This document shows, one piece after another, positions 11,335 to 61,067 of a DNA stretch of 64,000 nt; positions within the stretch are counted from its first letter, which is position 1; each line of letters opens with the position of its first letter. This stretch comes from Sminthopsis crassicaudata. Taxonomy: Eukaryota. The stretch lies in assembly GCF_048593235.1 (NCBI RefSeq), contig NC_133621.1, positions 299,965,146 through 300,029,145 on the forward strand, written 5' to 3'. Made by a program: the position numbers and the translations under genes. The notes under the pieces were generated by a model. It had not been told where the DNA came from, ran no database searches, and saw only the letters and a program-made list of their open reading frames with translations.

Positions 11335-35473
<24,139 letters not shown>

Positions 35474-37499
35474 CTTCGATCCTGCACATCAGGCACAAAA
35501 TCTCCATGAGGATGGAACAGCCAGAGAGAGAGCCCCACCCCTACCCGCCGACTGACGGGAGGCACAGGTAAGGTGGGCCACCCGGGGCAAGCAGAGGGTG
35601 GGAAAGAGCCCCCGAGCAGGGCTCTGGGCCCGCATGCCACTCCTGGTGCAGTCTGGAGGCCTGGGTTCAAGGCCTCTCCCGAGCAGAGATGCTCCCCTGC
35701 CCAGGGGCAGCCCTGAGAAATCATCGCCGGCCTCGGCAGCTCAGGCGCCTCCTCCGCGCGATCGTGGGAGGGGCCCCAGCCTGGCCGGGGGGTGGCCAGC
35801 CTCACATCGGACTGACCTGGCAATGGGCGTCCTGCCTCAGGCCGGGGGCAGCTGTGGGGTGTCGAGGTACTGCAGCTTCATGCACAGGGGATCCACGGGG
35901 ACTCGCTCGGGAGAGCCCAGCACGAGGTGCTGTTTGCTCCTCCACCTGGGAAAAGAGCCAGGAGGCACAGACTTGCGGCCCAGAGCCGACTTGGCGGCCC
36001 TAGGCAAGCCCCATTTGGCCCTGAGCCTCTGTTTTCTAATCTGTATAATGGGAACGTAAGGCCAGAAGATCTCTAAGATTCCTTCAAGTTCAGAGAATCT
36101 GAAAAAGGTGACAGGTGACAAGCAGCAAGACATGAGAGCGATTACTTGTCTTCTCCCCAGCCCCCTGCCTCTGACCCAGTGAGGCTTCCTTTGCAGAAAA
36201 CAATTGGATATCGTCAGAAGATCTGAATTCCCTGCTAGGCTATTTATCACTGCGGGACCCGGGAGAAATTACATCAGCTCCGACAGCTTTACTTTCCTCA
36301 TCTGTGAAATGGAGCAGTTGGAACATCGGGGACGGTCTACCTGGGGAAGCCTGTGCAGCCCTTCTCAGAATCATGCAGAGGAGCAGAACCCAATGGCCAG
36401 CGGACCCAAGATGTAAATGTTCTCCCACCCAAGTTCCCCAGCACCCGGGGGATCAGCCCGCTGGTCCAGACGGGCAGTCTGCTCGCCCTTCTCAGGCCGG
36501 GAGCGGCTACCCGTCCATTGGCCAGCTGCAGACCGCCCCAAGGGACCGCTCGTTACGAGATGCCCCGGCCCGATCACAGCACCTCCCCTCGTTTTCTGAT
36601 TTTTGTCTCAGGCAAAGACCTGAGAACGAGGAGGGAGGGATGGTACTGAAACACAGCAGCACAAATTAAAAATCGACAATCCCACAGAACCACTCCTATG
36701 CTTATATGAAAATAAAACAAGGCGATTTAAGAAAAGTGTGCGCGTCAGGACGCCGTGGCTTCATCTCCCAGGACCAGCAGATGGGGCCGTGCTCTTTCGA
36801 CCGCTCCGCATCACTCATCCCGGTCACTTGGGATGCTTCCTGATGGCGGCGAGAGGGCCCAATTCTGCAGCGGGCAGCAGCGCACCGCCGGCTGCCCGGG
36901 AACCGACTTGTTCCGTCTGGGCTCAGGCAACATGGAAGCCTATCCCTGTGACTCTCCTGTATGTATTCATTCATTCTACGGGCAGACCTACTATGCGCTG
37001 ATTCAGCACAACCCCTAGGAATACAGACATGCAAACAAGCATGGGCTTCCCCTAGAGTGGCACTGAGCAGTCCTTCTGCCCTAGCCTGCAGGGTGGGGGT
37101 TGTTACATCCCGAGGGGTCAATCAGTGCAGGAAGGGGATCCTGGCTGACACAAAGAGGAAAACACCTGCAGTGTTCTGGCCAGACTGGTATACAGTGGGG
37201 GCATAATAAATACCCATTGCCATGCCCTTCTCCCCCACAATCTCTAGTACCCCAAGCCGGACTGACCACTCCTGGGCACGGATTCTCACTTAACCTCCCG
37301 CCTTTATGCACCTTCAAACCCCAGGCAACTAACACTGAGTAAGCACCTACTGTGTGCAGGGTAAGGGGCTGAGGCTGGAGACGAAGCCCCGCCCACATCA
37401 CTGCCTATTGGTCAGTGAGTCCTTATAAAGGGCCTACTCTGAGCTCCTCTCCGGGGAGAATAAGCATGTATTGAGGGCCTACTGAGTGTCCAGCACCTT

Positions 37500-38480
37500 G
37501 GGTGCCCACAGCGGAAGGCCACAGAGGATGAGGATTTGAATTCACTTCCTCCTGAGGGCTCCGCGCCACCGAGATGGCGGATATAACACGTGTAGCCATG
37601 GCGTTCTCGCCATGGGGGCGAAGGCTCGGAGGCAGGAGACGGAGCGGCTGAGGTTGGGCCTGGACCCAGCCCAGATTACTAAGCTCCCCAGGCCGCAGGT
37701 CCACGCGCCATAAAATGGAGGGAAAGAAGTCCGGGAGGGGAGATGATCGTAAAGCGCGGCGCTGTCGTGAAAGGCGGGGAGCGCGTGCCGTTACCTAAGC
37801 GGGGCGGCTCCCTGCCTTAAGCCACTCACGCCGGGGATCCCTCGGGTGTGTTGCGGGACCAGCTCCGCACGACCCACCGAGCGTCCCCTTCAACACCCAG
37901 AAGGACGCCCTGGGGTCGAGAGATGGGCCCCATAGCGGTGGGGCCGCCGGGACGGACGTCCATCGTGCCTCCGGCCTACTATGCGTTCTTACGTTCCAAG
38001 GCGACCCCCGTAGTGCGCCCGTGCACGCGGCTCCCGGGAGCCTCGCAATTCCCCAAGGAAAGCAGCATTCCTTCGTGTGTGCACGCACGTGCGTGCGAAG
38101 CCAGTCTTGGAACGCCGCGACGCCGTTACTATGGCGATCTCAGGGGCGGACCTTGGGGAGCGACTATTGTTGGTATGGGGACGAGCCCAATGGGCGTAGG
38201 GGGCAAGAGGGGAACAGATGACATTTTCGCGTTTCCTTGTTTATATCGGGGAACTTATCCGAGCTGACCTTCTAGTTATGTTCTCTTATTAGAGGAATCC
38301 GAAGGCAGTTCGAGCGTGTACGGCGTCTCTCCGACAAACTTTCACCTCTCCAGCAATCTGCCCTTCCCCCCTGCTTCCAGAAAGTGGTAGAACCCGAGGC
38401 GGTGGCGCGCAAGCGCGGTCGGTGGGCCGGCGGTCTGCTGGATTTGGGCCCCAAAGGGCTCCGGCAGAACATCACAGGTA
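37500..38480. promoter_or_regulatory. FAM227A/CBY1 bidirectional CpG-island promoter, copy A, including CBY1 non-coding exon 1 (donor cag|GTAAGT after 38477)
   Basis: CpG-rich, lies between divergent genes; CCAAT and GC elements; degenerate X-box GTTACTATGGCGAT at 38125-38138; minus-strand donor tag|GTAACG near 37793. Confidence 0.8.
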
Positions 38481-40439
38481 AGTGAGTCTTTCCTTCTTCC
38501 CAGCAGTCAGTTCTGTAAGAGCAGGATTGTTCTGGGCTGGCACCCCCAGCACCTCCACCCACAAGGGCTTGGTATTTGCATTTTAAATGACTGCTGGCTG
38601 GTACCTATGAAGTGGGTAGAGCGGAGGTTCCAGAGTTGGTGGACCTGAGTTCAAATTCAGCCTCCAACACTTCCTAGCGGTGCAACGCTGGACAGGCCAC
38701 TTTCTCCGCCTCAGTTTCCTCATCTGTAACATGGGAATAGCGTCACCTGCCTCACGGTGAGGCAGTGATTGTAAAGCACTTCGCTCAGGGCTTGGCCTGT
38801 GTATGCGCCTGTGCTGTCTCCCCTCCACAGGAGGGTGCTTCTAGAAGGCGCCTGGGTGGGTGGTGGGGCCGGGTTTTAGGAGCACCGGAAGCGCTTGCTG
38901 AATACCTTCTTTAGCCCGGGGCTGCTGGGTAACAAAGAGCCTTACTGGTGCCCCTGGAGGGGGGGCTCTCCCTCTCTTCATCCCGGCCTTCCTTGGGGTT
39001 GGGAGCACAGGCTTCTGGCCCTAGAAGCCACTCCAGAGAGCATAAGATTGGCTTAGGGTCACCCAGGCGGAGTGGAGAGCAAGCCCTGGGATTGGATTCC
39101 CCCTTAGCCCCTTACTAGCTGGCCGGCCCTGGGAAAGTCACGTAGCCTCAGGTGGCTCCTCTCTAACTCGTCCCTCCGGTCTAAAGCTGGGGGGACCTGA
39201 TGCCACGTCCAGGATTTCCACGACTCACCCGCCTCCTTCAAGGAGCGCCCCTCCATCCCCTTTTTGTCCCTGCGGGGCCAGCACAGGCCCTCCCTGCGTG
39301 GGGTAGGCCTGGGAGGAATGGTCCTGGAGGCGGACCAGTAACACACAACAAAGCGCGGTCCCTGACGGCGCAGGCCCCATAGTGGCCCTTGGTGTTTTGG
39401 GACCCATAGCCACAGCCCGGTGGTGCATGAGGTCAGTCTCGTCAGGGGCAGTTCTGGATCCCCCCCACGCCTCCCGGACTTCGAGGAGCGTTTCTCAGCA
39501 TTATTGGCAGCTTGGTGCACAATTAGAATTTAGGGATAAGTGGGTCCAGGCAGAGTTGGGAAGGAATTCCTTCCTCGTGTCCATTTCTACTTAAATGTCC
39601 TGGCGGCATTCTGCCAGAAGAGAGTCGTTATTAGTAGCACAATTAAAACAGAGGGAATGGACAAAGCAGGGCGGGAAGGGACTTGGGCAGCAAGCTCTGC
39701 TTCCCAGCCGAGGCATGTGGGAGGGCAGACTCGGGGGCTGCTGAATGTGGGGGGAATTTCCCATCCTGGGCACGTCAAGCCCAGCGGCTCACCACCTGTA
39801 AAGCAAGGCAACCTTTCGGGGCTTCAGTTTCCTCGTCTATGAAATGGACTGCCTTCTGACGTTCAGTCCTTCTGGTCTTTGCACTGGCCTTGGCTGCCTC
39901 AGGTAGGAACACTTAGATGGCAGCGTGGATAAAATACCAGCTCTGGAGTCAGGAGGACCTGAATTCACATCTGGCTTCAGACACGTAACACTCACTAGAC
40001 AAGTCATTTAACCCCAATTCCCTTGCAAAAGAAAAAGAATGAAAAAAGATGAAAGCCTTTTAAGTACAGGCAAGTGAGAGACTTAAGTCCGTTCTTCTTC
40101 TCAGTGCCCATTCCTGCATTATTTGCAAACATAACTCAGAAAGTGCAGTGATGCGCTAAACTGTTCCTCCCCAGGTTGGCGCACCTTTCCTGAGCGCCTT
40201 GCTGTTGGGGGATAGAGGTCATTATTGAGGGAAGACCATTTAGCCTTGTGTCTTTTGTAGGCCAGGACAGAGCTTCACTGAGAGGAAAAAGCATCTCAGG
40301 ATGAGAGAAGCGGCAGCCAGGGAATTCTGGGCCATGTGTCCTTGTGACCCCTCCCCCATGACAGAAGCCACCCGTCGTCATCCCCTAACTTCTCGCTGTT
40401 TTTTCTCTGCTCTAGGAGGAGGTGGAGCTTTACTGGGAG

Positions 40440-43400
40440 ATGCCTCTCTTCAGAAATAAGTTCAGTCCCAAGAAGACGCCTCCTCGGAAGTCAGCCTCTC
40501 TCTCCAATCTGCACTTTGTGAGTGAGCCCTGACTAGAGTAGGAGGAGTGACTGTAAAGGCATAGGGCAGAAGGGTGCTTCCAGGAAGGCCCAGGACAGCT
40601 TAGGAAGCTGCCTCCTAATAAGGAGATCCTTGTGCAGAGCCCTCTTTGAAGGGCACTAGCTTTAGAGCCTATTTGTCACATCACAATATTTGCCTCATTG
40701 CTGCATAGTCACAGCTGAATAATTTTAAAAAATAAAATAAAACTAGTATCCTTCCCCTGCTTTATCACTGAATTCTGTTCCCCAGACTTGGGACTAAATG
40801 GCTATGACAGTTTCAAAAAATCCAACTCACTTTAGGGGATAGAAGCAAGATTTGTCACGATGGCAGATCTCCCGAACAGCATATTCCAGGACCAGGATGT
40901 GTTGGGAGCAGTAGGCAGCTTCACTGGGACAGTTCCTGGAGCCCACTCCCAACCCCCATGGGGGATAACATGCATTTGCTTGTCAGTCTCACTGCAGGGA
41001 TAGAGACAGGAGCCTGGGACTTCATTGGTGGAGGAGGTGCCAGCAGCATGCTCTGGGCAGCCTGTGGTCTCGGTTACTTCCGGTATGGAGAGTTTATGTA
41101 AACTGCCCAGCTTACTGAGCCCAGATATATGAGAAACAGAACTTGACCAGGTCTTGCTGGCTTTGAGGCTGGTTTCCCATGCACCACTACACAGCCTATG
41201 GAAAAAAAAATCAGTCACAGAATTATAATCCTGCTTGGTAAAAATGCTACCAATAATCCTTGATGTACTTTTGATCCCTTAATAGTTGATGAAAAAGGAG
41301 TTTGTATTTTTTTCACTTAATAAGCATTTATTTTCTCTCCCTCCAAGGGAGAAAAAACTTGTCACAAACTATCTGGTCAAGCCAAGCCAGTTCTTGCACA
41401 CACCATGTCCAAGCAGGATCATGGAGGTGGGGGGAGTGGTGGAGGGGTATCTGTCCCTCTGCTTCAGGAGTTGAGCAGTAGGCTTCTTCCTGCTTACTCT
41501 ATTCCTCAGTGTTCCCAAGTCTGAAATCAGTTCTCACCCATTAAGTTTGGAGAAGAAAAAGATCAGAAAGAGGAGGAAGTGCTCTAAGGACAATGGCCAT
41601 GTCAGCCAATGAAGGGTGAGAAGCAGCGCAAAGACTTGCCCCCAAGTCTCACTTATCAGGGGTAGGGTCGGTGATTCCAGACTTCCAGATACAGAATCAA
41701 GTATCCGATCTGCCTCTTCAGCCAACCTTCAAGACAACAGCACAAAGCAACTACAAATTAACTTGTTTATTTTACTTAAACTACATCTTTAGAGTAGTAC
41801 CAATATGTCAATCATCAAATTATAGGATCTCATCTTTGGCAAAGACCTCTAAAGTCAAGCAGTCCAAACTCTTCTCAAACTGGAATTTCTCTACAACATT
41901 GTCAGAAGATATCCATCAGGGCCACAGGAGAGCAAGAGGTGGCTATGGTGCCATAGTGTGTAGAGCAGAATGCCAGGCCTGGGATCAGTAGAAACCAAGT
42001 TCAAATCCAGCCTAGCTGTGGGATTCTGGTCAGATCCGCAAAGGTCTCTCTATCATAGTTTCTTCATCTGTAGAATAATAACAACCCCTACTTCTCAGGA
42101 TTATTGTGAGGATTTTAGATTATGGTAGAGCTTTAGCCACAGAAAGCCTAACTCCTAATTTGTTGCCTTCCAAGGCCATCCATTTTGTTTTTCCTACATA
42201 AGGAAATTGTCCAGAATCTATCCTGTTGGAGTCCAGCTCCAGTGAATACCGAGAGTGTGAACTTGAATTGAATATCTATGAAGTCTACAGGTAGAAAAAT
42301 TTAATTTGCAATTTTTCATCTATTAATCTGAGAGCCAGAGTTTATATACTCTTTAATGTTGCATTAATGGTGCTATATATATTCCAGGGTTAATGAATAG
42401 ACCATACTTCCAACATTTCAGTTTGACCTTAACTAACATTAACAAAGTATCTATCATAACAAGGTCATAAATGATAGTAACTATTGATAATAAGATATCT
42501 CTCATAACAGACTTATTAATAGTAGTAAGTATCAGTAATAAAGTATTTGTCAAAACAGAATTAATTGTAAATAGCGCAGTCGTGTTGCCTTGTTCCTGTT
42601 ACATGCATTCTCCATCAAGAGTATATTAAATTTATATCGAGTATGTCTTTTATTCATTGTTAAGGGAGGTGGTGAGGTAAGGCTTTGAACTGTTTGCCCT
42701 TACAGAGACCAGGTCTCAGTAATACCTGAATTGGACTTTTCCTGTATGGGGACTTATTCAATACTGGCCCTCTCTATCTCCCCCTTTTTTATTCAGAAGA
42801 TGAAGTCTATGAACTTAAGTTCCCATAGTTGACAATGATGAGAAAACATATTGGAAAACACAAGAGGCTAAGCCAATGAGTATAGGAATGACACATGCAA
42901 GAACAAAACACAAAAGCATAGAAAAATCAGATTATTTACAGGATTTATCTTTTTCAACCACTCAAATACTTTGTTTGCTATGCTGTCAGTTTCAATTCCA
43001 GGGGCACTAATTGTGCCATATTTTCTGCCAAAGCAGCTAAGATATATGCAAAGTGAGGTTGGAATTATGTATAGCTCCATTTATTCTGTTCCTTATTTGA
43101 AGCCATGTCACATTTTTGGTATCATTGTCTCGTCTATATGGAGTTACACATACATAAGTAAAAATATAAGCACGTTAGTTGTAATCAAGTTTCCAAATTG
43201 TTTACATAACCCCTAACTATATTAATAATTTTTCCATTAAATTTAATTCTTGTTTTAGCTCATTGTATTAATTTGTTCTTTAAGAGCTTATGATACATTT
43301 TTTACTAATTGATCTGTGAATTGGGCAGTCTGAATAGATTCTGTTAGAGATGTAGCTGAAATGGCAAGTGAATTAATAATTGCCATAGCTGCTAGAATTC

Positions 43401-46400
43401 CAGCAATGAGTAATCCAACAAATCACCTTTTCCTACTTCTGTTGTTTTCTAATTTTCTTTTGACATTATCTCAAGCCTGTTTACCTGCTGATGGCTTCCA
43501 ATTGTAACTAATCTTAGTAGGCACCATCCTTGGTTCAATAATAAGAAACATAGGTAGTGATTTAGAAATAAGACATTGGATTAAAACGTATTTGTAACAT
43601 TTTATAATATATCCTGCTGACACATTCATGATTTATATTCCAGAATCATTTCTTAAAACATTATCTGTAGTTAGATGATATTTCTAACATAGTTTAAGCA
43701 TGCCCATATGGTATATTTCTGCAGGGCCTGAAACATCATGGAATCCCATATCTGACATGTGAAAATCTGTTCCATCCCAAGTCCCAAATACATTGTAACA
43801 GGGGACCCATCCAGACACTCGATAATTTGGGGTACATTATCACCAACCAGTTCCAGTTCTTCTCCAAACAATAGGGCCTAAAGTCCTCTGGGAGCAGAGG
43901 CAATGATCTCATCTTCTGAAACTACCTCCTCCTGAGAATGGGCATAGAGCTGAGTCACCTACAGGGTCCCATTCTTTTTTTGGAGGAAGTGGTAAGCTGG
44001 AACTGATTGAAGTATCCAATGGTTGATTCAGCTCCTTTAAGCTAGTAAGTACAGTTGTAACTGACCAAAGTCTAAAGAAAAGAAAGAAATCTAATAGAGG
44101 CTAAAATAATCTGAGATAGAAAGACAAGCCCACAAGGACTGCTATAGGTTCTAGAGAGGCCAATGTAGATTGACCAGCAACTTTTCACATAAATACATTT
44201 GTTTAACAGGACACACAGTACATACAAATGTTAAAGATATTTCAGCTTTAATTTCAATAATAAAATAACAGCTCTTATAATCAATCATGCTAATTGTTCT
44301 TACATTATTTTTGAAACCTTTAAAGACCTTATTTCATATAGACATAAACATCTAGTAATAGATAAATGACTAGGCCAAATACTCATTCATTAAGTTATTT
44401 AGACATAATGACTAGATTTTTCAGATTGAAAACAAGATGATATGTAATTGAATTGTGTTCATGGCTTCTATTGACTTCTGATTATATAAATTTGCTACAG
44501 GAGTAAAATACAGGGGTATTATTATAAAAACTGATTCTTCAAGCTTCTGTCTGGGAGCATATACATGACGGGATAAAGCATCCTTAGCTCAGTTTGATAT
44601 CTGATTATAACAATTACACCTTATAGCCAGATTCAGGAATAATCAGGTGGGTTCTTATTCAAGGAGACACAACTGGGGAACTGAGTCAGAAGGATCTCCC
44701 CTTGAACAGAGGCCAAGGTTCCAACTCTTTGTCTAAATACAGAACTTCACTTATAACAGTCCAGGATCACGTTTTTCTGAGTAGCTTATGGTATTTCTCT
44801 CAATGGGTGGGTTACTGACTTAATGGTCAGGCAGTCCTGAAAAAAAAATTTCAGGAGCCCTGAAAGCATTTCAGATAAAATTTTAACCTTAAGCAAAGAT
44901 TAAGATTCAAAACTCAGTCCCAAGAGATTTTATCTCTAACAGTAAATACTACTAATCACAGTTTAGAGCCAGATAAATTCTTTTTTAAAATGTTTACCAA
45001 AACTTACACACACAGATTTTGTTTAACTTGTTTTATATGTTTAAGCTTATCCTGGTGCAAAGAACTGATCATTAAACAAGTTTATAGATTCTTAGTAAAC
45101 ACTTTCTTTGTTTAGGAACTATACATCCTAAACAGGCTCATTTCTCAGGACTGATGACCTTGCTTACCCTGATGCTTTCAAGACAACTGGCAAGCTTACA
45201 AATTAAGGGAAGTTGACAGAGACCTGAAGGAAGGGACTGAGCTTCTTGTTGCCCATCACAAGCATTCTTAGTGTTTTTATGGGCCATGCTGTTTGATACC
45301 TCCTCCCACCCTGTGAAGGGGGAGAAAGGTACTTTATACCTTCATACTTTTTCTTTTTTTAAATTTAATTTTATTTATTTGCTGAGGCAATTGGCGTTAA
45401 GAATTAGTCACACATCTAGGAAGTGTTAAGTATCTGAGAACAGATTTGAACTCAGATCCTCCTGACTTCAGTGGTACTCTATACACTACATCAACTAGCT
45501 GCCCTAGCATGAGCATTTTCGAGGGCAAATTGTTTCAATAAAATTTAAGCTGCCTCCCCATGCTGATTGAAGGTTGAATTGCCATCATTGAGCAATTGAC
45601 AGCCAGCAAAGGTGTCATTGGGTCCTTGCACAATTTTTGTATAGAATGTCCCTCTGTCCCTACTGTCTGATTGATTTTGCCTATTCCAATTCAATCTGTA
45701 CTATATTGATATCAGCTGGACAAGAATCAATCTTACAACTTATATCTAATATCTGATATATTTTAATCCTCGTGTTAGCCTGGTGACAAACTACCTTCAC
45801 CTCTTACTTACCTTCTTTTTCTTTAAATGTTGAGCTCACCAAGAGGTCACTCTCCTGCCCGGTCATTCAAGTGCCTGTTCTAGGCGCCAACTGTTGAGAG
45901 TCCAGCTCCAGTCAATAAATACCATGTGTGTGAATCTGAATTGAATATCCACGAGGCCAGACAGAAAGATTTGCTTTGCAATTTTCCTTTATTAATCTGA
46001 GGGCCAGAGTTTATATACTCTTTAAGCTAGTGTTGCATTAATACCAGCTACCTCCAGGTGGCGCGATATACATTCCAGGTTAACATATAGAGCATAGTTC
46101 CAAGATGCAGTTTGACTTTAAGTAGCAATAAAACGTTGTAAATAGCAATAATTATCAATAACAAGGTATTTGTCAAAACAGAGTTGTAAATAGCATAGTT
46201 GTGCTGCCTTGTTCTTGTCACATGCATTCTCCATCAAAAGCATCCTAAATTTATCTCCAGTATATCTATCTCTCATTCATTGTTAGGGTTGGTGGTGAGC
46301 CAAAGTTTTGAATTGTTCACCCTTACAGAGAGCTGGTCTCAGTAATCTCTGAAGTGGACTCTTCCTGTACGTGGATTTACTGAACACTACTCCACAGTTT

Positions 46401-49280: not shown

Positions 49281-50345
49281 TGTCAGAGGCGCCAAGCCCT
49301 GGGGGTCAGTACCAAGGGGTCAGGGAAAAGGGAGGGCTGGCCCTAGTGGAGGTACTGGTGGAGCACGTGACCCATGCACACACACAGCATGCAGGATTGT
49401 CTGGGGCTGGGAAATATTGGGGTGATGTGGCTTTTAACCTTTGGGGATGGTCTAACTGGAGAAGCTTTTGTGCCCCTTCTCAGAATAATGCTTTTGATGG
49501 AGAGGATTAGAAAAGAAATCATAGTCAGGGAGACCCAAGATGTAATTGTTTTCCTACCGAAGTTCCTGAGCACCCTAGGGGATTAGCACCTTGGTCCAGA
49601 TGGGCAGTCTGCTCTCCATTCTCAGGCTGAGAGGGGCTATGTGTCCATTATCCCCTCATTACCCTGAGATGCACCAGCCCTGATCACAGCACCTCCCCAT
49701 GCCTTCTGTCCTTTCTCTTAAGCAACAAAGTGAGAATGAGGAGGAGGGATGGGTAGTAGTAAAACACAGCAGCACAAATTAAAAATCAATATTCCCACAA
49801 AATCACTCTCATTTGTATGAAAATAACAAGCAAAACAAGGTGATTGAAGAAAATTGTGCATTTCAGGATCCTGTGGCTTCATTTCTCAGGACCAGCACAT
49901 GCAGCACTTGGAAAGGCCTTGGGCCTGCGGGATGAGTGTCAAGTGTCACATGCTTGGGTAGGGCCAACATGGGAAATCCATTCTGACGATGCAGGTGTTA
50001 CAAGGATTTTGGCTTTTGGTTTTTCCATTGAGGGGCTAGAGAGCTGGCCGTAGGGCTGTCCAAAACAATAAAGAGAGAGAAAAGCAGGGCTCCTGAAGCA
50101 TTTTTATTTTAAATGCACAGCAGAGAAGGCCAGAAATAACCTGAGCTTGAGCAGGCCAGCTTTCACAATAACCTGAGAGATTTATTAAATGGAGAACTGG
50201 AGCAATCATTTGCTTGTCTTTTTTTATGAGAAGGCATTGATTTTATGCCCTTCTGGAGATTTTTAATTTGTGATGTTATGTTTCATCACTATCCTAGATA
50301 TAAAGTAAATAAAAAGCAAGCCATCCAGAAGAATGTCCATTTTAC

Positions 50346-50547
50346 NNNNNNNNNNNNNNNNNNNNNNNNNNNNNNNNNNNNNNNNNNNNNNNNNNNNNNN
50401 NNNNNNNNNNNNNNNNNNNNNNNNNNNNNNNNNNNNNNNNNNNNNNNNNNNNNNNNNNNNNNNNNNNNNNNNNNNNNNNNNNNNNNNNNNNNNNNNNNNN
50501 NNNNNNNNNNNNNNNNNNNNNNNNNNNNNNNNNNNNNNNNNNNNNNN
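50346..50547. other. Assembly gap (202 N)
   Basis: Run of N. Confidence 1.
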
Positions 50548-51271
50548 ATATATTTTTAAACAGGAGGGCTCATAGAGAGCAATCCTCTCTATGTGTATAT
50601 GAGGCCCAATGGGTGGTGGGCACTTGCCCAGGGCCCCCAGAATTAGCTGAAGACAACAGCAAGGCCAGGCCTGTTTCCCGACACCCCATTCTACCAGGCT
50701 CATGACCTCTCCTGACCAAATGCCCGCCATCTCAGGGTAGTTGTACCTCTCCTGCTGAGATAGGGTTAACACATTGAGAAGCCCTGCTTCCATCAGCCTG
50801 GAGACCCCAGACCCGCTTTGGACACCTGCTGAGAGGCACTCTGTGCCCAGAGGAAGGCAATTAGTACAGGGAAGAGCCCTGAGTCAACTTTCCGTGAAGA
50901 TGGGCTGAAGGAACCATTACTGGAGGAGGGACGAGTTTCATTGGGCCCCAGAAAGCAGACCCAGGGGCCATAGTAGGATGTGGTCAAAAGCTATTGTCCC
51001 CGCTAGGAGCTGCCTGAGATAGCCTCAGCTTCCGACAGGGACTGGACTCCGACCTGCCGCTCTGTAGACAGAGGCTGCAAATACCCGATCACATACAGGA
51101 CAGATGGGTGGGCCATGGGGAATCACTGCCTGCCAGCTCCCCAAATCTGTGATTCTGGGGCAAAGCCCTGGTGGTCAGCCAACTCATGATGAGGCAAGAC
51201 TACCCTGGACACCGTGTCCACAGATGAGGGAAAAGGTGCTGAGCAAGCTGCCCCACCCCGTGGCCCTGCCT

Positions 51272-51441
51272 TTGAGAGCCCCCATCAGAGGGAACCCCTC
51301 ATATGAAAATCTCCCCGCTACAGGGAACCCCACACTATGGAGAGTCCCCCAACTACAGAGAGCCCCGCACCACAATGAACCCCATACTATGGGGGCCCCC
51401 ACACCACAGAGAATACCCCACTACAGGGAGCCCCCCCCATT
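51272..51441. repeat. Degenerate ~17-bp minisatellite (about 10 units, e.g. agggaaccccacactat)
   Basis: Periodic purine-run / C-run / cac-tac pattern. Confidence 0.7.
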
Positions 51442-52299
51442 AGGAGTTGGAGGCCATGATGCAGTCAGAGACTTCCTCTATTTTTGAACAGAGCCAATGG
51501 GCTCCAAGGGCCGTTGGAAGCCATTCTGCCCAAGCCCTCCCTGGGAGGCCCTGGGAAAGGATCGGCCTCTAGTGGCATGATAGGGTCCTTCTCCTCCCAC
51601 ATCGCTCCTTGGACAAACCCTGCTCGTTTTTCATCACAATCACTTCGGATTAGTTTCCTGATGGCGGGAGAGGGCTAACCTGCAGCCCTGGCCCAATTCT
51701 GCAGCGGGCAGCAGCGCACCGCCGGCTGCCCGGAAACCAACTTGTTCCGTCTGGGCTCAGGCAACATGGAAGCCTATCTTGTGATTCTCCTGCTATACAT
51801 TCATTCTACGGGCAGACCTACTTTGTGCTGACCCAGGCTAGCCCCTAGGAATACAGACATGCAAAACGAAGGTGTCCCTGCCTTGGGTCAACAAGCATGG
51901 GCTTCCCCTAGACTGACACTGACCAATCCTCCTGCCCTGGAGAGGGGGGGGGGCACAATCAGTGCAGGAAGGGAATCCTGGGCTGAGCTCCAAAGGCACC
52001 AGTGACACAAACGGGAGAACATCTGCAGTGTTCTGACAGGGCTGGTATACAGTAGGTGCATAATAAATGCCCATTCCCATGCCCCACTCCCCCACAATAC
52101 CAAGTACTACAACTGAATGACTACTGCTGGAATAGGGCACGGATTCACACTTGACCTCCCGCCTTTATGCACCTTCAAACCCTAGGCAACTAACACTGAG
52201 TAAGCACCTATTGTGTGCAGGACAAGGGGCTGAGCCACATCACTGCCTATTGGTGAGTCCTTTTAAATGGCCTATGAGGAGCCAGGCACCTTGGGTCCC

Positions 52300-53300
52300 C
52301 ACAACGGAAGACCACGGAGGATGAGGGACTTGCAGGTAGGGAGTGGCGCAGGATTTGAATTCAGTTCCTCTAATTCCTTCCCCCCCACCGCCCCCCCAGA
52401 TTGCGGATATAACACGTGCACCCACGGCGTTCTCGCCATGGAAGCGAAGGCAGGAGATGAGCGGCTCAGGTTGGGCCCTGACATACACCAGACTACTAAG
52501 CTCCCCAAGGCCGCAGGTCCACTCGGGGAGGAAAGTCGGAAAGCGCGGCGCTGTCGTGAAAGGCGGGCAGCGCGTGCCGTTACCTAAGCGGGGAGGTTCC
52601 CTGCCTCTAGCCACTCACGCCGGGGATCCCTCGGGTGTGTTGCGGGCCCAGCTCCGCACGACCCACCGAGCGTCCCCTTCTACACCCAGAAGGACGCCCT
52701 GGGGTCGAGGGATGGGGCCCCATAGCGGTGGGGCCGCCGGGACAGACGTCCATCGTGGCTCCGGCCTACTGTGCGTTCTTACGTTCCCAAGGCGACCGCA
52801 GTTGGCCCTTCATGGCCCCCGTAATGCGCCCGAGCACGCCGCTATCGGGAACCCCGCGTTTCCCCAAGGGAAGCCCATTTCTTCTTAGAGTGTGCGTACG
52901 TGCGCGCGCAAGCCCATCTTAGAACGCCGTGACGCCGTTACTATGGCGACCGCAGGGGCGCATCTTCCTTCAGGATTGACTATTGTTGGCATGAGGACGA
53001 GCCCAATGGGCGTAGGGGGCAGAGGGGAACAGATGACATTTTCCCGTTTCCTTCCTTATATTGGGGCGCTTATACTAGCTGACTCCGTGGTTTTATTGTC
53101 TTTTTAGGGGAATCCGATGCGGTTCGAGCGTATATGTGCTCTCTCCGACAAACTCTCACCTCCCGGTCGATCTGCCCTTCCCCCCCCGCTCCCAGAAAGT
53201 GGTAGAACCCGAGGAGGTGGCGCGCAAGCGCGGCCGGCGGGCCGTTGGGCTGCGGGATTTGGGGCCCTAAGGGCACTAGCAGAACACCACTGGTAAGTGA
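52300..53300. promoter_or_regulatory. Duplicated bidirectional CpG-island promoter, copy B, including CBY1 non-coding exon 1 (donor ctg|GTAAGT after 53292)
   Basis: Homologous to 37.5-38.5 kb (~80-85% by eye); near-canonical RFX X-box GTTACTATGGCGAC at 52937-52950; NRF1-like TGCGCGCGCA near 52901. Confidence 0.8.
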
Positions 53301-55590
53301 GTCTTCCTAACTCGGCCCTCCCCTTATGGGGTTTCTCTACAGACAGTCCAGGCCTGGCACACACCGTAGGCGCCTAATCTGTGCATGGGGAATGATGGGT
53401 GCGCTTGTTTATATGTGTCTCCTGGCCCCCTGAGGACTAAATACACAGCAGGTGCTTAGTATGTGCCTCTGGGGGGTTGGGGTTACATGTACCAGTCTGG
53501 GGAAGTGTCTTCTCAGTAGAATGTAAGCTCCCTGTGGGCAAGGTCTCCTCTTGTCAGCGCTCCGCCCCCGTCAGGCACACTGCAGGCACCTAATACTTGC
53601 ACCCGGACTCCCGAGTGTACACGGTGCTCCCTCAGCAGTCAGTTCTGTAAGAGCAGGATTGTTCTGGGCTGGCACCCCCAGCACCTCCACCCACAAGGGC
53701 TTGGTATTTGCATTTTAAATGACTGCTGGCTGGTACCTATGAAGTGGGTAGAGCGGAGGTTCCAGAGTTGGTGGACCTGAGTTCAAATTCAGCCTCCAAC
53801 ACTTCCTAGCGGTGCAACGCTGGACAGGCCACTTTCTCCGCCTCAGTTTCCTCATCTGTAACATGGGAATAGCGTCACCTGCCTCCCGGAGTTGTGGGGT
53901 ATACGGTGAGGCAGGGATTGTAAAGCACTTCGCTCAGGGCTTGGCCTGTGTATGCGCCTGTGCTGTCTCCCCTCCACAGGAGGGTGCTTCTAGAAGGCGC
54001 CTGGGTGGGTGGTGGGGCCGGGTTTTAGGAGCACCGGAAGCGCTTGCTGAATACCTGCTTTAGCCCGGGGCTGCTGGGTAACAAAGAGCCTCCAGGGGAG
54101 GGGGGGCTCTCCCTCTCTTCATCCCGGCCTTCCTTGGGGTTGGGAGCACAGGCTTCTGGCCCTGGAAGCCACTCCAGAGAGCATAAGATTGGCTTAGGGT
54201 CACCCAGGCGGAGCGGAGAGCAAGCCCTGGGATTGGATTCCCCCTTAGCCCCTTACTAGCTGGCGGGCCCTGGGAAAGTCACGTAGCCTCAGGTGGCTCC
54301 TCCCTAACTCGTCCCTCGGGCCTAAAGCTGGGGGGACCTGATGCCACGTCCAGGATTTCCACGACTCACCCGCCTCCTTCAAGGAGCGCCCCTCCATCCC
54401 CTTTTTGTCCCTGCGCGGCCAGCACAGGCCCTCCCTGCGTGGGGTAGGCCTGGGAGGAATGGTCCTGGAGGCGGACCAGTAACACACAACAAAGCGCGGT
54501 CCCTGACGGCGCAGGCCCCATAGTGGCCCTTGGTGTTTTGGGCCCCATAGCCACAGCCCGGTGGTGCATGAGGTCAGTCTCGTCAGGGGCAGTTCTGGAT
54601 CCCCCCCACGCCTCCCGGACTTCGAGGAGCGTTTCTCAGCATTATTGGCAGCTTGGTGCACAATTAGAATTTAGGGTTAAGTGGGTCCAGGCAGAGTTGG
54701 GAAGGAATTCCTTCCTCGTGTCCATTTCTACTTAAATGTCCTGGCGGCATTCTGCCAGAAGAGAGTCGTTATTAGTAGCACAATTAAAACGGAGGGAATG
54801 GACAAAGCAGGGCGGGAAGGGACTTGGGCAGCAAGCTCTGCTTCCCAGCCGAGGCATGTGGGAGGGCAGACTCGGGGGCTGCTGAATGTGGGGGGAATTT
54901 CCCATCCTGGGCATGTCAAGCCCAGCGGCTCACCAGCTGTAAAGCAAGGCAACCTTTCGGGGCTTCAGTTTCCTCGTCTGTGAAATGGACTGCCTTCTGA
55001 CGTTCAGTCCTTCTGGTCTTTGCACTGGCCTTGGCTGCCTCAGGTAGGAACACTTAGATGGCAGCGTGGACAAAATACCAGCTCTGGAGTCAGGAGGACC
55101 TGAATTCACATCTGGCTTCAGACACGTAACACTCACTAGACAAGTCATTTAACCCCAATTCCCTTGCAAAAGAAAAAGAATGAAAAAAGATGAAAGCCTT
55201 TTAAGTACAGGCAAGTGAGAGGCTTAAGTCCGTTCTTCTTCTCAGTGCCCATTCCTGCATTATTTGCAAACATGACTCAGAAAGTGCAGTGATGCGCTAA
55301 ACTGTTCCTCCCCAGGTTGGCGCACCTTTCCTGAGCGCCTTGCTGTTGGGGGATAGAGGTCATTATTGAGGGAAGACCATTTAGCCTTGTGTCTTTTGTA
55401 GGCCAGGACAGAGCTTCACTGAGAGGAAAAAGCATCTCAGGATGAGAGAAGCGGCAGCCAGGGAATTCTGGGCCATGTGTCCTTGTGACCCCTCCCCCAT
55501 GACAGAAGCCACCCGTCGTCATCCCCTAACTTCTCACTGTTTTTTCTCTGCTCTAGGAGGAGGTGGAGCTTTACTGGGAGCCTCTCAGAG

Positions 55591-58500
55591 ATGCCTCTTT
55601 TCGGGAATAAGTTCAGTCCCAAGAAGACGCCCCCTCGGAAGTCAGCCTCTCTCTCCAATCTGCATTCTGTAAGTGAGCCCTTGCTCGGGTAGAAGGAGTG
55701 ACTCTAAAGTCATAGGGCAGAAAGATCTTCCAGGCGGGTCCAGGAGAGCTTAGGAAGCCGCCGCCTCATAAGGAGACCCTTGTGCAGAGGCCTTTTTTGA
55801 GGGGCACTAACTTTAGAACCTATTTGTCATATTTTAAAAGTAAGGGAAAAAAAAACAACAGTATCCTTCCCTGCTTTATCACTGAACTCTGTTCCCCAGA
55901 CTTGGGACTAAATGGCTATGACAGTTTCAAAAAATCCAACTCACTTTAGGGGATAGAAGCAAGATTTGTCACGATGGCAGATCTCCCGAACAGCATATTC
56001 CAGGACCAGGATGTGTTGGGAGCAGTTCCTGGAGCCCACTCCCAACCCCCATGGGGGATAACATGCATTTGCTTGTCAGTCTCACTGCAGGGATAGAGAC
56101 AGGAGCCTGGGACTTCATTGGTGGAGGAGGTGCCAGCAGCATGCTCTGGGCAGCCTGTGGTCTCGGTTACTTCCGGTATGGAGAGGTTATGTAAACTGCC
56201 CAGCTTACTGAGCCCAGAACTTGACCAGGTTTTGCTGGCTTTGAGGCTGGTTTCCCATGCACCACTACACAGCCTATGAAAAAAAAAATCAGTCACAGAA
56301 TTATAATCCTGCTTGGTAGAAACGCTACCAATAATCCTTGATGTACTTTTGATCCCTTAATAGTCGATGAAAAAGGAGGTTGTATTTTTTAAATTAATTT
56401 TTTCAAAAAAAAAAAAAAAAAAAAGCCCTTGTCACAAATTCACAAACGACATGGTCAAGCTAAGCCAGTTCTTGCACGGGCAGGAGCATAGGGGGTCTGT
56501 CCCTGCTAGGTCAGGACCTGGGCAGTGGATTTCTTCCTGCTTACTCCATTCCTCAGTTTTCAGGTCTGAAATCAGTTCTCACCCATTGAGTTTGGAGAAG
56601 AAAAAGACCAGAATGAGGAGGAAGTGCTCTAAGGACAAAGGTCTTGTCAGCCAGTGAAGGGTGGGAAACAGAGCAGAGATTTGCCCCCAAGTTACACTTA
56701 TCAGTGGTAGGGCTGGTGACTCCAGACCTCCAGATACAGAATCGAGTGTCCCATGACCCTCTTCAGCCAACGTCTAACTGCCTTCAGGACAACACAAGGC
56801 AACTACAAATTAACTTGATTAGTTCATTTTAGTACATCTTTAGAGAGAAGTACAATATCATCTCAATCTCATGGACAGAAACAACTACACCCAGAGAAGG
56901 AACACTGGGAAGTGAATGTAAATTGTTAGCACTACTGTCTGTCTACCCAGGTTACTTATACCTTTGGAAGCTAATAATTAACGTGCAACAAGAAAATGGT
57001 ATTTACACACATATATTGTATCTAGGTTATATTGTAACACATGTAAAATGTATGGGATTGCCTGTCATCTAGGGGAGGGAGTAAAGGGAGGGAGGGGATA
57101 ATTTGGAAAAATAATACAAGGGATAATGTTATAAAAAAATTACTCATGCATATATACTGTCAAAATAATTTTTATAATTATAAAATTAAAAAAAAATTAT
57201 AGGATCTCATCTTTGGCAGGGACCTCTGAAGTAAACAGCCCAACCTCTTCTCAAACTGGAATCTCTCTACAATATTGCCTGGAAATATCCATCAGGGCCA
57301 CAGGAGAGCAAGAGACGGCTATGGTGCCATAGCGTGAAGAGTAAAACGCCAGGCCTGGGGTCAGGAGAAGCCAAGTTCAAATCCGGCCTAGCTGTGGGAT
57401 TCTAGTCAGATCCCCAAAGCTCTCTCTCTCATAGTTACTTCATCCCTAGAATAGGGATAATAATAGCCCCTATTTCTCAGGATTATTGTGAGGATTTTAG
57501 ACTATGGTAAAGCTTCAGCCACAGAAAGCTTAACTCTTAACTCATTGCTCTCCAAGGCCACCCATTCTCTTTTTCCAGAACCTGTTCTCCAGAACCTACC
57601 CCACAGTTTCCATTCCTTGTTTATGCTTAGACTATCAGTGCAGTCCCTCTTCTGCGTGGTTAAGGGAGCTGGTGTGCCTTCTCAGGCCTGGAGGCCCTCC
57701 TCCTTCACCTGATCCTGTTAGATCCTGCTTCTCAGGCTCCTCTCTGTCCCAGTCATCTGAGATTCAGTTTAGTATCTTCATCCTCAGAGTGTACCCACAC
57801 ACCCACTGGGGTCCCCAGGGCTGGAGCAGAAGAGGACTCTTGGAATGGACACCATGTATTCCATTTCTGTCTCACAAAGTCCCCCAGCCCATCACCACTC
57901 CCTGAAGTGGGCTGAGGGCATCGCAGAAATGATCTTGGAGGAAAGAGAGGACTGAGCTCAGAAGGGAAGTGGGCGAGAACCTTGGTGATGTCTCTGCCCT
58001 GAATGCTCCAGGCATCTGTTCTCAAGGAGCGCGTGCTGGGATGGAGGAAAGCAGCACTACCCAGAATGAACGTAAAAGGAATAAAGGGGGTCCCTGGGTA
58101 TGGTTTTAAGAAAACTTGCCCAAGGGCAGGATGGGAACATCATCATGATCTGATGACTCCAGGCTGGGTGAAACAGGATAGCCCGGGAAAGGAGGGCTGA
58201 GGGGGACTGTAGGAGCCTGGTAGGCCACAGGTGGATTAGAGGTCCTGGGGGCAGCTGCTCAGAAGGCTTCCCATTGTCCGAAGCCTCAGACTGTGCTCCA
58301 AGAAAGGCAGAGCAACTTGTACAAGAGCCCTTCAGGCCAGTTCCAAGGGTCTTGTGATAGAGAGAGCCATCTGCATCCAGCAAGAGGATTATGGGAACTG
58401 AGTGTGGATCACAATATTGCATTTTCCCTCTTTCTGTCGTTTGCATTTTGTTTTCTTTGTCATTGTTTTCCTTTTGGATCTGATTTTTCCTGGGCAGCAA

Positions 58501-60649
58501 GAGAATTGTAGAAATCTATGTAAAAGAATTGCACACATTTAACGTAATGGACTACTTGCTGTTAGAGGAGGGAATATGGGGGCAAGGTAGGGGAAAAAAT
58601 TTAAGCACAAGGTTTTGTAAGGGTGAAGGATGAAAATTATACATGTATATATTTTGAAAATAAAAAGCTTTCATTTAAAAAAAAAAAAAAAGACATGGAA
58701 GAGCCCGAAAACATTTCAGATGAAATTTCAACCTTAAGCAAAACTAATCTGGATTAAGACCATAGAGAGCGGTTGGTGCTTTTAAAAAAGGCCTTTTTTC
58801 GCCTAAGTAGCCATTTCCCTGTAGGTTTCATTTTGCCTTCCAGTTCAGCAGTGTATTTGGAACAGGATTCAATTTGCAGGATTTCGGTTTCCCCGAGAAA
58901 CATATTGTAGCAGTGACCACTGTTTACAGTTCTATATTTGGGATCTCTCTGATGCCAGTTTCTGACAGTGTGGCCAGATTTCAGTTTAAAAAACCATGTG
59001 ATGTGCCAGAGCCTGTAGTTCCAAAGACCCCAAGAACGACCGCTGCCCTCAGAGAGCCGTTCTGCTGGCAAATCGCCACACAGCAGGATTTACAAAACCA
59101 ACTCAGGAGCAGAGCATTGATGAGTCAGTGGGGCAGGAAGGAAGCCAGGGCATGGAGGCCGGGTGGGAGTAAGGGGAATAGTAGGCAAGCTGCCTGCCCC
59201 AACCCTTTAATAAGCAAAGCAAGACTCCCAGGAAGGAAAGTATTTATCCATCAGAAAGAGTTGTTACTTTGTGACTCTGGGGATGAAGGAGTACGCTTCA
59301 GTATCCTGCCCTGAGAATGGGGGCCACGGTTCTGGGTCTGCTCACGGCTCCATATTGTGAGGATAAAACAGGACTTGGCTCTGCAGAGACAGTGCCAGTC
59401 CCAGATCGCAGGGTCAGGTGGCCATCCAGAGGCAGAGCCTCCTCCCATCTGTGGGGCACTTCACTGGATCCTCAGAAAAGCTCTCAGGCAGGGAGAGACC
59501 ATCAGCCCCATTTTTCAGTGAGGAAACTGAGGCCAGCCTCACAAAGTACTGAACTGCAGAGCCCGGACTCGCCCTTCAAGACCATTCTGCCATGTCTGCA
59601 AGGCCTCCTGCCCTGCCATGGCAGGGTCTTTAGCAAACCCTCATGAGGAGCCAGGCCTCGGGCTCAGAGCTGAGCCGGCCTCTGGTCTGTTTGTTGCCCA
59701 CAGTTGGACAGATCCACTCGGGAGGTCGAGCTGGGACTGGACTATGGAGCGCCAACCTTGAACCTGGCTGGGCAGAGCCTCAAGTTTGAGAATGGCCAAT
59801 GGATAGCAGGTGAGAAGCCTGGGCTGCCCCCTGGGGTCCCTGCATGGGGAGAGGGGCTCTCATGGATCCTGCTCCTCTTTTCCCAGAGTCAGGTGCCTGT
59901 GGAGGCGTGGATCGCAGGGAGGCGCAGCGACTGCGCAAGAGGAACAAGCAGCTGGAAGAGGAGAACAATCTCCTGCGAGTCAAAGTGGAGATCCTGCTGG
60001 ACATGGTGAGGGGCTGGGCCAGGGAAATCTTACTGGTTATGGTGAGGGGCTAGGTCCAGGACATCCTGCTGGACATGGTGAGGGGCTGGGCCTGGGAAAT
60101 CATACTGGTTATGGTGAGGGGCTAGGTCCAGGACATCCTGCTGGACATGGTGAGGGGCTTTTTGCTGGAGTCAAGACACTCAGAGTAGGGGTTGCCTTGG
60201 AGGAGACAGACCTGGCCCCTGCCATCTGTGGGTGTGCCATCTGGGCCCTGTACCCTGAAAGGTACCCTGTACCTGTCCATTGGCCCCACCAGAATCTCCC
60301 CCACCTAATCATTGTTTCTTTGTGGAGCAGCCCCTTCCATGTTGCCCACATCAGGTTTTGTTCCTGACATATGGGCCTCAAAAGCTTACAGATCTCCCCA
60401 AGGGGCGGCTGCATCTTCAGGCTGAACAAGATAATTCCCCATCGGGAGCCCTTGGCTTGTGGAGCCCGAGAGGAGGGGCTCCTTCTGATGTCTTCACCTG
60501 CCTCCAGATGGGAGGGCCAGCTGTGCTGAGGGCCCTCGGCCTCACGGTGTGTCCCACATTCCTTCCAGCTCGCTGAGACCACAGCCGAGTCCCATCTCAT
60601 GGAGAAGGAGCTGGATGAACTGAAGAGCATTAGCCAGAGGAGGAAGTGA
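55591..60649 (+). CDS. CBY1: Chibby homolog 1, copy B; exons 55591-55668, 59704-59809, 59887-60005, 60569-60649; intact 127 aa
   Basis: MPLFGNKFSPKKTPPRKSASLSNLHS/LDRSTREV.../...GGVDRRE...ILLDM/LAETTAESHLMEKELDELKSISQRRK*; canonical splice sites; branch point CCCTAAC before exon 1. Confidence 0.96.
56868..57195 (+). mobile_element. 5'-truncated L1 3' end inserted only in CBY1-B intron
   Basis: Marsupial L1 3'UTR (G-rich ggggagggagtaaagggagggagggg, A tail); flanks are contiguous in copy A (catcaaattataggatctc, ~41815). Confidence 0.75.
58331..58692 (+). mobile_element. Truncated L1 3' end with poly(A), only in CBY1-B
   Basis: L1 3'UTR with AATAAA and A tail; degenerate duplicated ...aagagccc on both sides. 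Confidence 0.7.
59991..60159 (+). repeat. 36-bp tandem repeat (4.7 units, 72-bp higher-order dimer) spanning the CBY1-B exon-3 donor
   Basis: Five atgGTGAGGggct donors, after 60005, 60041, 60077, 60113 and 60149. Confidence 0.95.
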
Positions 60650-61067
60650 TGTCAGAGGCGCCAAGCCCTGGGGGTCAGTACCAAGGGGTCAGGGAAGAGG
60701 GAGGGCTGGCCTTGGTGGAGGTACTGATGGAGCACATGTGACCCATGCACACACAGCATGCAGGACTGTCTGGGGCCGGGCCTCCGGGCAGAAGAGGAAG
60801 AGGCGCTCATTCTAGAGCTTGGAAATCTTGGTATGATGTGGCCGCCAGAGCAGCTCCATCCAAGACATGTGCTTCATTCAGATGGATCATCAGCTTGCTC
60901 CTACTTGGCCCCAGCCACAACAAGCTCTGGGGTGGCCTGAAGTCCAGCTTTGATCCTCAGCCTGGTTTGTCCCTCTCCTAAATTAGTAGCTCGGTGGCTT
61001 CATTGGCTCATCCTTTTTTCCTGCTCCCATGGGAGTGCAGGGGTTCTAGTTTTTACTATTAGTTTTT

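What the first reader, a model, noticed from the sequence alone, without database searches (positions are those of the whole stretch)
36322..60842. Two intact tandem CBY1 (Chibby) genes, each with its own copy of the bidirectional promoter
Seen: two complete 4-exon, 127-aa CBY1 ORFs with intact splice sites. They differ at 11 of 384 coding nt and 3 residues (A/B: R5/G5, F26/S26, A69/V69). At all three, copy B matches recalled human CBY1, so the derived changes are all in copy A. Known: CBY1 is a beta-catenin antagonist and basal-body/ciliogenesis factor, single-copy at this locus in human. Inference: a retained lineage-specific duplicate under constraint. F26 sits by the RKSASL (S20) 14-3-3 motif and the N-terminal export signal, so copy A could shuttle differently. 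The A/B junction (49431/49436) is in contiguous sequence left of the gap, which argues against a scaffolded haplotig.
Basis: partly seen in the sequence, partly recalled or inferred. Interest (0 to 1): 0.78.

Follow-up and report, generated by a model that had tools for sequence, protein, structure and literature searches.

The report
Old tandem CBY1 pair in dasyurids
The fat-tailed dunnart really has two intact head-to-tail copies of the cilia/Wnt gene CBY1. The pair predates the dasyurid radiation (over 20 million years), RefSeq already annotates it, and gene conversion keeps the copies alike except for a small island at the first coding exon.

Summary
There are two 4-coding-exon, 127-aa CBY1 genes on the + strand, differing at 11 of 384 nt and 3 residues (R5G, F26S, A69V).

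The window is Sminthopsis crassicaudata (GCA_048593235.1). The N run at 50346-50547 is a mask over contiguous sequence and lies in non-coding DNA upstream of copy B.

The duplication is not an artefact. Tasmanian devil (two assemblies) and Antechinus have the same junction and the same order, FAM227A, CBY1-A, CBY1-B, TOMM22. Bilby, koala and Dromiciops have one CBY1. The duplication therefore arose after the split from bandicoots and before crown Dasyuridae (about 21-29 Mya).

Most of the unit, including exons 2-4, groups by species, which indicates repeated gene conversion. The unit's 5' end groups by paralog. So does a roughly 100-bp island at coding exon 1, holding a 10-nt deletion before the ATG, R5 and F26.

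Both copies evolve under purifying selection, and all six copies keep a CpG island.

RefSeq already lists both genes in all three dasyurids, but no paper was found.

The parts
36328..49411 (+). Duplicated unit A (CBY1-A; RefSeq 'protein chibby homolog 1-like', P0183)
   Evidence: Self-blastn; boundary alignments; exon peptides match P0183 exactly.
49412..49442 (+). A/B junction filler. It is contiguous here and conserved in devil and Antechinus.
   Evidence: window 49312-49560 aligns unbroken to L002 20283-20517 and to Antechinus 22949-23183.
49443..60780 (+). Duplicated unit B (CBY1-B; RefSeq 'protein chibby homolog 1' isoforms X1/X2, P0181/P0185)
37600..38490 (+). CpG island of copy A (GC 0.62, CpG o/e 0.96). 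By homology the 5' non-coding exon ends at 38477, followed by a GTAAGT donor.
52400..53305 (+). CpG island of copy B (CpG o/e 0.94). It holds the RefSeq 5' exon at 53108-53292; the other RefSeq 5' exon (52267-52335) lies just upstream of the island.
40416..40517 (+). Copy A ATG exon (acceptor at 40415, ATG at 40440, 26 codons, donor GTGAGT)
48522..48627 (+). Copy A coding exon 2
   Evidence: Pfam Chibby positions 26-59.
48705..48823 (+). Copy A coding exon 3 (holds A69)
   Evidence: Pfam Chibby positions 67-99.
49200..49280 (+). Copy A coding exon 4 with TGA stop
55557..55668 (+). Copy B ATG exon (ATG at 55591)
59704..59809 (+). Copy B coding exon 2
59887..60005 (+). Copy B coding exon 3 (holds V69)
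60569..60649 (+). Copy B coding exon 4 with TGA stop
40436..40532 (+). Island of paralog-specific differences fixed in dunnart, devil and Antechinus. It comprises a 10-nt deletion between 40436 and 40437, plus sites 40448, 40452, 40454, 40514, 40516, 40531 and 40532. The copy B counterpart is 55578-55683.
   Evidence: Six-way alignments. There are no such sites in the 1.9 kb upstream, and only one (40726) anywhere downstream to the unit end.
42194..46382 (+). A-only 4.2-kb insertion in intron 1, bounded by about 0.5-kb direct repeats (42223-42765 and 45891-46388; LTR-like). It is shared by all three A copies.
49902..51689 (+). Ancestral upstream stretch kept in copy B and deleted in copy A (A has 36784-36855 in its place). 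It contains the masked N run at 50346-50547.
   Evidence: homologous to koala 4672-6541 and to the B copies only of devil and Antechinus.
35473..35473 (-). Start codon end of the FAM227A (FWWh) coding sequence, 855 nt outside the duplicated unit
   Evidence: Gene calls on L004, offset +30439.

Best explanation
In the stem lineage of Dasyuridae, a unit of about 11-13 kb was copied head to tail. The unit ran from about 4 kb upstream of the CBY1 start codon, promoter CpG island included, to 131 nt past the stop codon. The result is FAM227A, CBY1-A, CBY1-B, TOMM22.

Copy B kept the ancestral N-terminus (G5, S26), the ancestral upstream stretch and the ancestral 3' flank. Copy A acquired R5, F26 and a 10-nt deletion just before the ATG. 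It also gained a 1.8-kb upstream deletion, an LTR-like insertion in intron 1, and a new 3' UTR that runs into the junction.

Since then, interlocus gene conversion has repeatedly homogenised most of the unit within each species. This includes the 1.9 kb upstream of the ATG and exons 2-4. Two regions have stayed paralog-specific in all three genera: the unit's 5' end and a roughly 100-bp island at coding exon 1.

Shown: the duplication, its age bracket, the conversion mosaic, and purifying selection.

Inferred: both genes are active, because CpG islands are kept and the ORFs are intact. Also inferred: selection against homogenising exon 1 maintains two N-terminal variants of Chibby, which differ next to and inside the 14-3-3/NES region.
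For: - Identity and gene models.
- Same junction and gene order in devil (two assemblies, 99.5-99.98% alike) and Antechinus.
- Single CBY1 between FAM227A and TOMM22 in bilby, koala and Dromiciops, with no second exon set.
- Shared rare changes in A copies (1.8-kb deletion, 4.2-kb insertion, 10-nt deletion).
- Trees: the unit start groups by paralog (supports 88/90 and 84/91). The tract upstream of exon 1 and exons 2-4 group by species (supports 98-100).
- Site patterns, dunnart versus devil: 22:1 for orthology at the unit start, and 0:48 to 0:86 for concerted evolution further in.
- Six-way paralog-specific sites form an isolated island at exon 1.
- A exon 1 has 0 substitutions among three genera against 11.7 expected from its flanks (P about 8e-6).
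- dN/dS is 0.02-0.07 among A orthologs, 0.04-0.11 among B orthologs, and 0.11-0.20 between A and B.
- CpG o/e is 0.90-1.00 in all six promoter islands, as in koala and Dromiciops.
- Dates: crown Dasyuridae 20.6-29.3 Mya; Peramelemorphia split 47.6-64.4 Mya (PMC5715987).
Against: - There are no expression data.
- Conversion from B could keep exons 2-4 of A intact without selection acting on A.
- The exon 1 island could persist because its indel and mismatches impede conversion, not because of selection.
- F26 occurs in single-copy bird CBY1, so it need not change function.
- Thylacine, numbat and quoll were not examined.
- Loss of a second copy in bilby cannot be formally excluded.
Confidence: 0.75

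Rival explanations
1. The duplication and gene conversion are real, but the exon 1 island is a neutral by-product. Once a 10-nt indel and several mismatches accumulated there, heteroduplex rejection stopped conversion tracts at that spot. The two proteins are then functionally equivalent, and the pair is kept for dosage or by chance.
For: The island is short and contains an indel. F26 and L26 are ordinary states in sauropsid CBY1. The A-B dN/dS of 0.11-0.20 shows no sign of positive selection.
Against: Conversion tracts end on both sides of the island independently in three lineages, while 1.9 kb upstream is fully species-specific. A exon 1 is frozen, with 0 substitutions against 11.7 expected. 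Both nonsynonymous differences are on the A side, and G5 is otherwise nearly invariant.
Confidence: 0.2
2. Copy A is a silent or dying duplicate that only looks intact because conversion from the working copy B keeps repairing it.
For: Exons 2-4 of A are converted in every species. No RNA evidence could be obtained.
Against: Exon 1 of A is not converted, yet it is identical in three genera, with its ATG, donor and A-specific residues kept. A keeps a CpG island with o/e 0.90-1.00 in all three species, which methylated silent DNA would lose. RefSeq models exist for A in three species.
Confidence: 0.04
3. Assembly artefact: two haplotypes or a mis-scaffolded repeat placed in tandem.
For: An N run lies inside the finding. 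No read depth could be checked.
Against: The copies are only 72-96% identical and have different indels and flanks. The N run is a mask over contiguous sequence. The same junction and order occur in two devil assemblies and in Antechinus.
Confidence: 0.01

Closest known systems
CBY1 (Chibby 1) of human and mouse: beta-catenin antagonist and basal-body/ciliogenesis factor
   Same: Both copies match Pfam Chibby. They are 84-87% identical to eutherian CBY1. They keep the RKSASL S20 14-3-3 motif, the coiled-coil exon and the FAM227A/TOMM22 neighbourhood.
   Different: There are two tandem genes instead of one. Eight residues changed in both dasyurid copies relative to other marsupials (T7K, T42A, M45L, Q81K, L91V, D94E, S103A, R124Q). 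Copy A additionally carries G5R and S26F.
CBY2 and CBY3, the old vertebrate Chibby paralogs (own knowledge)
   Same: They are extra Chibby-family genes alongside CBY1.
   Different: They are ancient, dispersed and highly diverged. The pair here is a young, local, 97% identical tandem copy of CBY1 itself.
Tandem duplicates under concerted evolution with selectively retained differences, e.g. primate L/M opsins, RHD/RHCE, fetal globins (own knowledge)
   Same: There is a mosaic of conversion tracts that group by species, next to short segments that stay paralog-specific.
   Different: The retained island here is a single 5' coding exon of about 100 bp. No functional difference between the two variants is known.
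RefSeq models XP_074127843 ('chibby homolog 1-like') and XP_074127838 ('chibby homolog 1') of S. crassicaudata, with counterparts in A. flavipes and S. harrisii
   Same: They are exactly these two genes.
   Different: This is database annotation only. No paper describing the pair, its age or its conversion pattern was found.

Membership tests
Chibby family / CBY1 orthologue | Match to Pfam PF14645 above the gathering score | tested here: met
   Exons 1, 2 and 3 of both copies score 25.8-49.6 bits (cut-off 24.8) at profile positions 1-24, 26-59 and 67-99. Exon 4 is too short to score.
Chibby family / CBY1 orthologue | N-terminal 14-3-3 motif RKSA-S20-LS and NES 21-29 | tested here: met
   RKSASLSNLH is present in both copies. 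The motif is as defined in PMC4409382. Copy A has F at NES position 26. Phosphorylation and binding were not tested.
Chibby family / CBY1 orthologue | Conserved synteny FAM227A (-) / CBY1 (+) / TOMM22 (+) | tested here: met
   Gene calls in dunnart, devil, Antechinus, bilby, koala and Dromiciops. TOMM22 itself lies beyond the window end.
Tandem duplicate with interlocus gene conversion | The same duplication junction in several species (single origin) | tested here: met
Tandem duplicate with interlocus gene conversion | Some segments group by species and others by paralog | tested here: met
Functional (expressed) paralog | Transcripts carrying paralog-specific letters | not testable with these tools
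Functional (expressed) paralog | Purifying selection and an intact gene structure across species | tested here: met
Bidirectional CBY1/FAM227A promoter duplicated with each copy | A FAM227A start site or first exon inside the duplicated unit | tested here: inconclusive
   The CpG island is duplicated. The FAM227A coding sequence starts at 35473, outside the unit. Its 5' UTR and start site are unknown without RNA data.
Haplotig or assembly artefact | Near-identical copies, with the junction unsupported elsewhere | tested here: not met

The most novel reading that the evidence does not exclude
Dasyurids have kept two functionally distinct Chibby proteins for more than 20 million years. Selection blocks gene conversion at one small exon, so that CBY1-A keeps R5 and F26 and its own start-codon context and 3' UTR. 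CBY1-A would then differ from CBY1-B in 14-3-3/CRM1-dependent shuttling, in basal-body targeting, or in tissue use (for example a sperm or multiciliated-cell form). That would make the pair a natural separation-of-function experiment for Chibby's Wnt and cilia roles.
Probability: 0.3. Interest if true: 0.6.

Novelty: new member of a known kind. Interest (0 to 1): 0.4.

Why it matters
CBY1 is single-copy in the other mammals looked at here, and its N-terminus controls 14-3-3 binding and nuclear export. This pair is conserved and dasyurid-wide, and differs consistently only at the N-terminal exon. It could serve as a natural test of which CBY1 functions depend on that region.

It is also a clean, small textbook case of concerted evolution with a protected island. 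The fat-tailed dunnart is becoming a laboratory model, so anyone editing or quantifying CBY1 in dasyurids needs to know there are two nearly identical genes.

Otherwise this is an ordinary lineage-specific tandem duplication that RefSeq already annotates.

Tried and rejected
1. Haplotig or scaffolding artefact: rejected.

2. The 49902-51689 stretch as a B-specific insertion: rejected. It is ancestral sequence, present in koala, and was deleted in copy A.

3. The FAM227A side of the promoter decayed in copy B, based on CpG o/e of 0.04 in B against 0.63 in A at the unit start. Rejected: the CpG richness is peculiar to dunnart A and is absent from devil A, Antechinus A and koala.

4. The unit start as a common interspersed repeat giving false homology. 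Rejected: it has no other copy in the window, and it is collinear and groups by paralog in three species.

5. TOMM22 in 60.8-64 kb: not seen. It lies beyond the window.

6. PDB search with exon 1: no hit, because the deposited peptides are under 20 residues.

7. The bacterial-type promoter/terminator scan is irrelevant to a mammalian gene.

8. Dunnart transcriptome paper: no supplements are held.

No read depth, junction-spanning reads or RNA evidence could be obtained, and read laying was not used.

10. The joined 127-aa spliced models were never sent to a search tool. Searches used single exons or a stop-free ORF by reference, or database proteins by id. Codon 62, which is split between exons 2 and 3, was left out of the dN/dS counts.

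11. The large representative-protein search and structure prediction were not needed.

Full report
**What is in the sequence**

The window has two N runs, at 30311-30444 and 50346-50547. Self-comparison shows a head-to-tail duplication on the + strand. Unit A is 36328-49411 and unit B is 49443-60780. Block identities range from 72% to 96%.

Each unit holds four coding exons:
- Copy A: 40440-40517, 48522-48627, 48705-48823, 49200-49280.
- Copy B: 55591-55668, 59704-59809, 59887-60005, 60569-60649.

All exons have AG/GT splice sites and the genes end in TGA. Each encodes 127 aa. The copies differ at 11 of 384 nt and at three residues, R5/G5, F26/S26 and A69/V69. Exons 1-3 of both copies match Pfam Chibby at successive profile positions.

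**Species and the N run**

A word search used a stop-free ORF holding exon 3, given by reference. It was followed by cluster listings. These showed:
- The copy A exon peptides equal RefSeq XP_074127843, 'protein chibby homolog 1-like' of Sminthopsis crassicaudata.
- The copy B exon peptides equal the C-terminal 127 aa of 'protein chibby homolog 1' isoforms X1/X2 of the same species.
- The extra N-terminal exons of those isoforms map at 100% identity to 52267-52335 and 53108-53293.

Locus L004 of GCA_048593235.1 equals the window at offset +30439 at every non-N base. It has no N run, and the 207 disagreements equal the 202 + 5 N positions. The N run at 50346-50547 is therefore a mask over contiguous sequence of the same length. 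I only counted disagreements; the masked letters were not read, printed or used. Devil, Antechinus and koala are collinear across that place. The run lies in non-coding DNA upstream of copy B, so no reading frame is affected.

**Real or artefact, and how old**

Two independent Tasmanian devil assemblies (L001 and L002, 99.5-99.98% alike) and Antechinus flavipes have two Chibby genes in the order FAM227A(-), CBY1-A, CBY1-B, TOMM22. The dunnart junction stretch 49312-49560 aligns unbroken to both species.

Bilby, koala and Dromiciops have one CBY1 between FAM227A and TOMM22, and tblastn finds no second exon set there.

Three rare changes mark all A copies:
- A 1.8-kb upstream deletion. The stretch 49902-51689 kept in B is ancestral, because koala has it.
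- A 4.2-kb LTR-like insertion in intron 1 at 42194-46382.
- A 10-nt deletion immediately before the ATG.

The duplication thus predates the Sminthopsinae/Dasyurinae split, dated at 20.6-29.3 Mya depending on the analysis. Assuming no loss in bilby, it postdates the split from Peramelemorphia at 47.6-64.4 Mya (PMC5715987).

**Concerted evolution with a protected island**

Four-sequence site patterns (dunnart A/B against devil A/B) favour orthology 22:1 in the first 450 bp of the unit. They favour within-species identity by 0:48 to 0:86 in the tract upstream of exon 1 and through exons 2-4.

Maximum-likelihood trees with Antechinus and outgroups agree:
- The unit start groups by paralog.
- The 1.8-kb tract before exon 1 and the exon 2-4 segment group by species, with 98-100% support.
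- The CpG island gives a mixed picture.

In a six-way alignment I looked for sites fixed for one letter in all A copies and another in all B copies. They occur in three places:
- The unit's 5' end, 36351-37745 (23 sites).
- 38472-38500 (4 sites).
- An isolated island at the first coding exon: the 10-nt deletion plus 40448, 40452, 40454, 40514, 40516, 40531 and 40532, with one more site at 40726.

There are none in the 1.9 kb upstream of the island and none from 40828 to the unit end. The island carries both consistent protein differences, R5/G5 and F26/S26.

**Selection**

By Nei-Gojobori counts, with split codon 62 left out, dN/dS is as follows:

| Comparison | dN/dS |
|---|---|
| A versus B within a species | 0.11-0.20 |
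| Among A orthologues | 0.02-0.07 |
| Among B orthologues | 0.04-0.11 |

Exon 1 of A is identical in the three genera, 0 of 78 nt changed. Its flanks predict 11.7 neutral substitutions (P about 8e-6). Zero synonymous changes alone is not significant (P about 0.06).

All six promoter CpG islands keep a CpG o/e of 0.90-1.00, like the single islands of koala and Dromiciops. This argues that both promoters have stayed unmethylated in the germ line.

The 5' exon donor and the ATG-exon acceptor are conserved in both copies.

No poly(A) signal lies in the 131 nt shared after the stop codon. Copy A must therefore use a site in the junction or the B-upstream region (49778 or 50067), and copy B a site in the ancestral flank (61068).

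- Against marsupial outgroups, G5 and S26 are ancestral and R5 and F26 are derived in A.
- Position 69 is G in the outgroups, A in both Antechinus copies, and a GCG/GTG CpG site. It is neither paralog-specific nor polarised.
- Among 130 vertebrate CBY1 proteins retrieved here, residue 5 is G in 125. Residue 26 is variable, with L or F common in birds and reptiles. R5 is therefore the more unusual change.
- Position 26 does lie inside the published NES 21-LSNLHSLDR-29 and in the segment 26-SLDR-29, which is thought to touch 14-3-3 (PMC4409382). A functional effect is possible but untested.
- The FAM227A coding sequence begins at 35473, outside the unit. What is duplicated is the CBY1 CpG-island promoter. 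Whether it is bidirectional is unknown.

**Novelty and limits**

RefSeq already lists both genes in dunnart, devil and Antechinus. Full-text searches found no paper on a CBY1 duplication in marsupials. What is new here is the age bracket, the conversion mosaic and the exon 1 island.

The joined spliced proteins were not sent to any search tool; exons, one stop-free ORF and database protein ids were used instead.

It is a 36-bp minisatellite, with 2.8 copies in A and 4.8 in B.

Noticed in passing
window 48805-48905 and 59987-60159: A 36-bp minisatellite straddles the exon 3 / intron 3 border. Each unit repeats the exon end plus a GTGAGG donor. Copy A has 2.8 units and copy B has 4.8 (also readable as period 72, 2.4 units, 97% matches). 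Whether the extra in-frame donors are used is unknown.
   Followed up: partly
both CBY1 copies, all coding exons: Eight residues (T7K, T42A, M45L, Q81K, L91V, D94E, S103A, R124Q) are changed in all six dasyurid copies relative to bilby, koala and Dromiciops. Those three differ from one another by only one to five residues. dN from dunnart to koala is 0.032-0.039, against 0.0035 between koala and Dromiciops. This looks like a burst of protein change on the dasyurid stem, around the time of the duplication.
   Followed up: partly
window 36328-36783: The first 456 bp of unit A are CpG-rich only in dunnart (23 CpG, o/e 0.63). Devil A, Antechinus A, all B copies and koala score 0.04-0.28. This lineage-specific gain next to FAM227A is unexplained.
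   Followed up: partly
window 52267-52335, 53108-53292, 55557-55590: RefSeq isoforms X1/X2 of copy B begin at upstream in-frame ATGs, adding 96 or 70 residues read from 5' exons. In copy A the 10-nt deletion before the ATG breaks that frame. Koala and wombat models have similar extensions. These may be annotation artefacts or real long isoforms.
   Followed up: no
window 42194-46382: This A-only 4.2-kb element has about 0.5-kb terminal direct repeats that are 74-80% alike (LTR-like). It has no long ORF left. It is shared by the A copies of devil and Antechinus, so it inserted before crown Dasyuridae.
   Followed up: partly
window 53306-53632 and 56858-57194: These are B-only insertions of about 330 bp each, just after the 5' exon donor and in intron 1. 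Their nature was not determined.
   Followed up: no
window 29597-30308, next to the N run 30311-30444: A tandemly repeated stretch with self-matches at 77-84% identity and offsets of about 170-460 bp abuts the first N run.
   Followed up: no
protein P0142 (Pipistrellus kuhlii, 'chibby homolog 1-like'): Another mammal has an annotated extra CBY1-like protein. Lineage-specific CBY1 copies may therefore not be unique to dasyurids.
   Followed up: no
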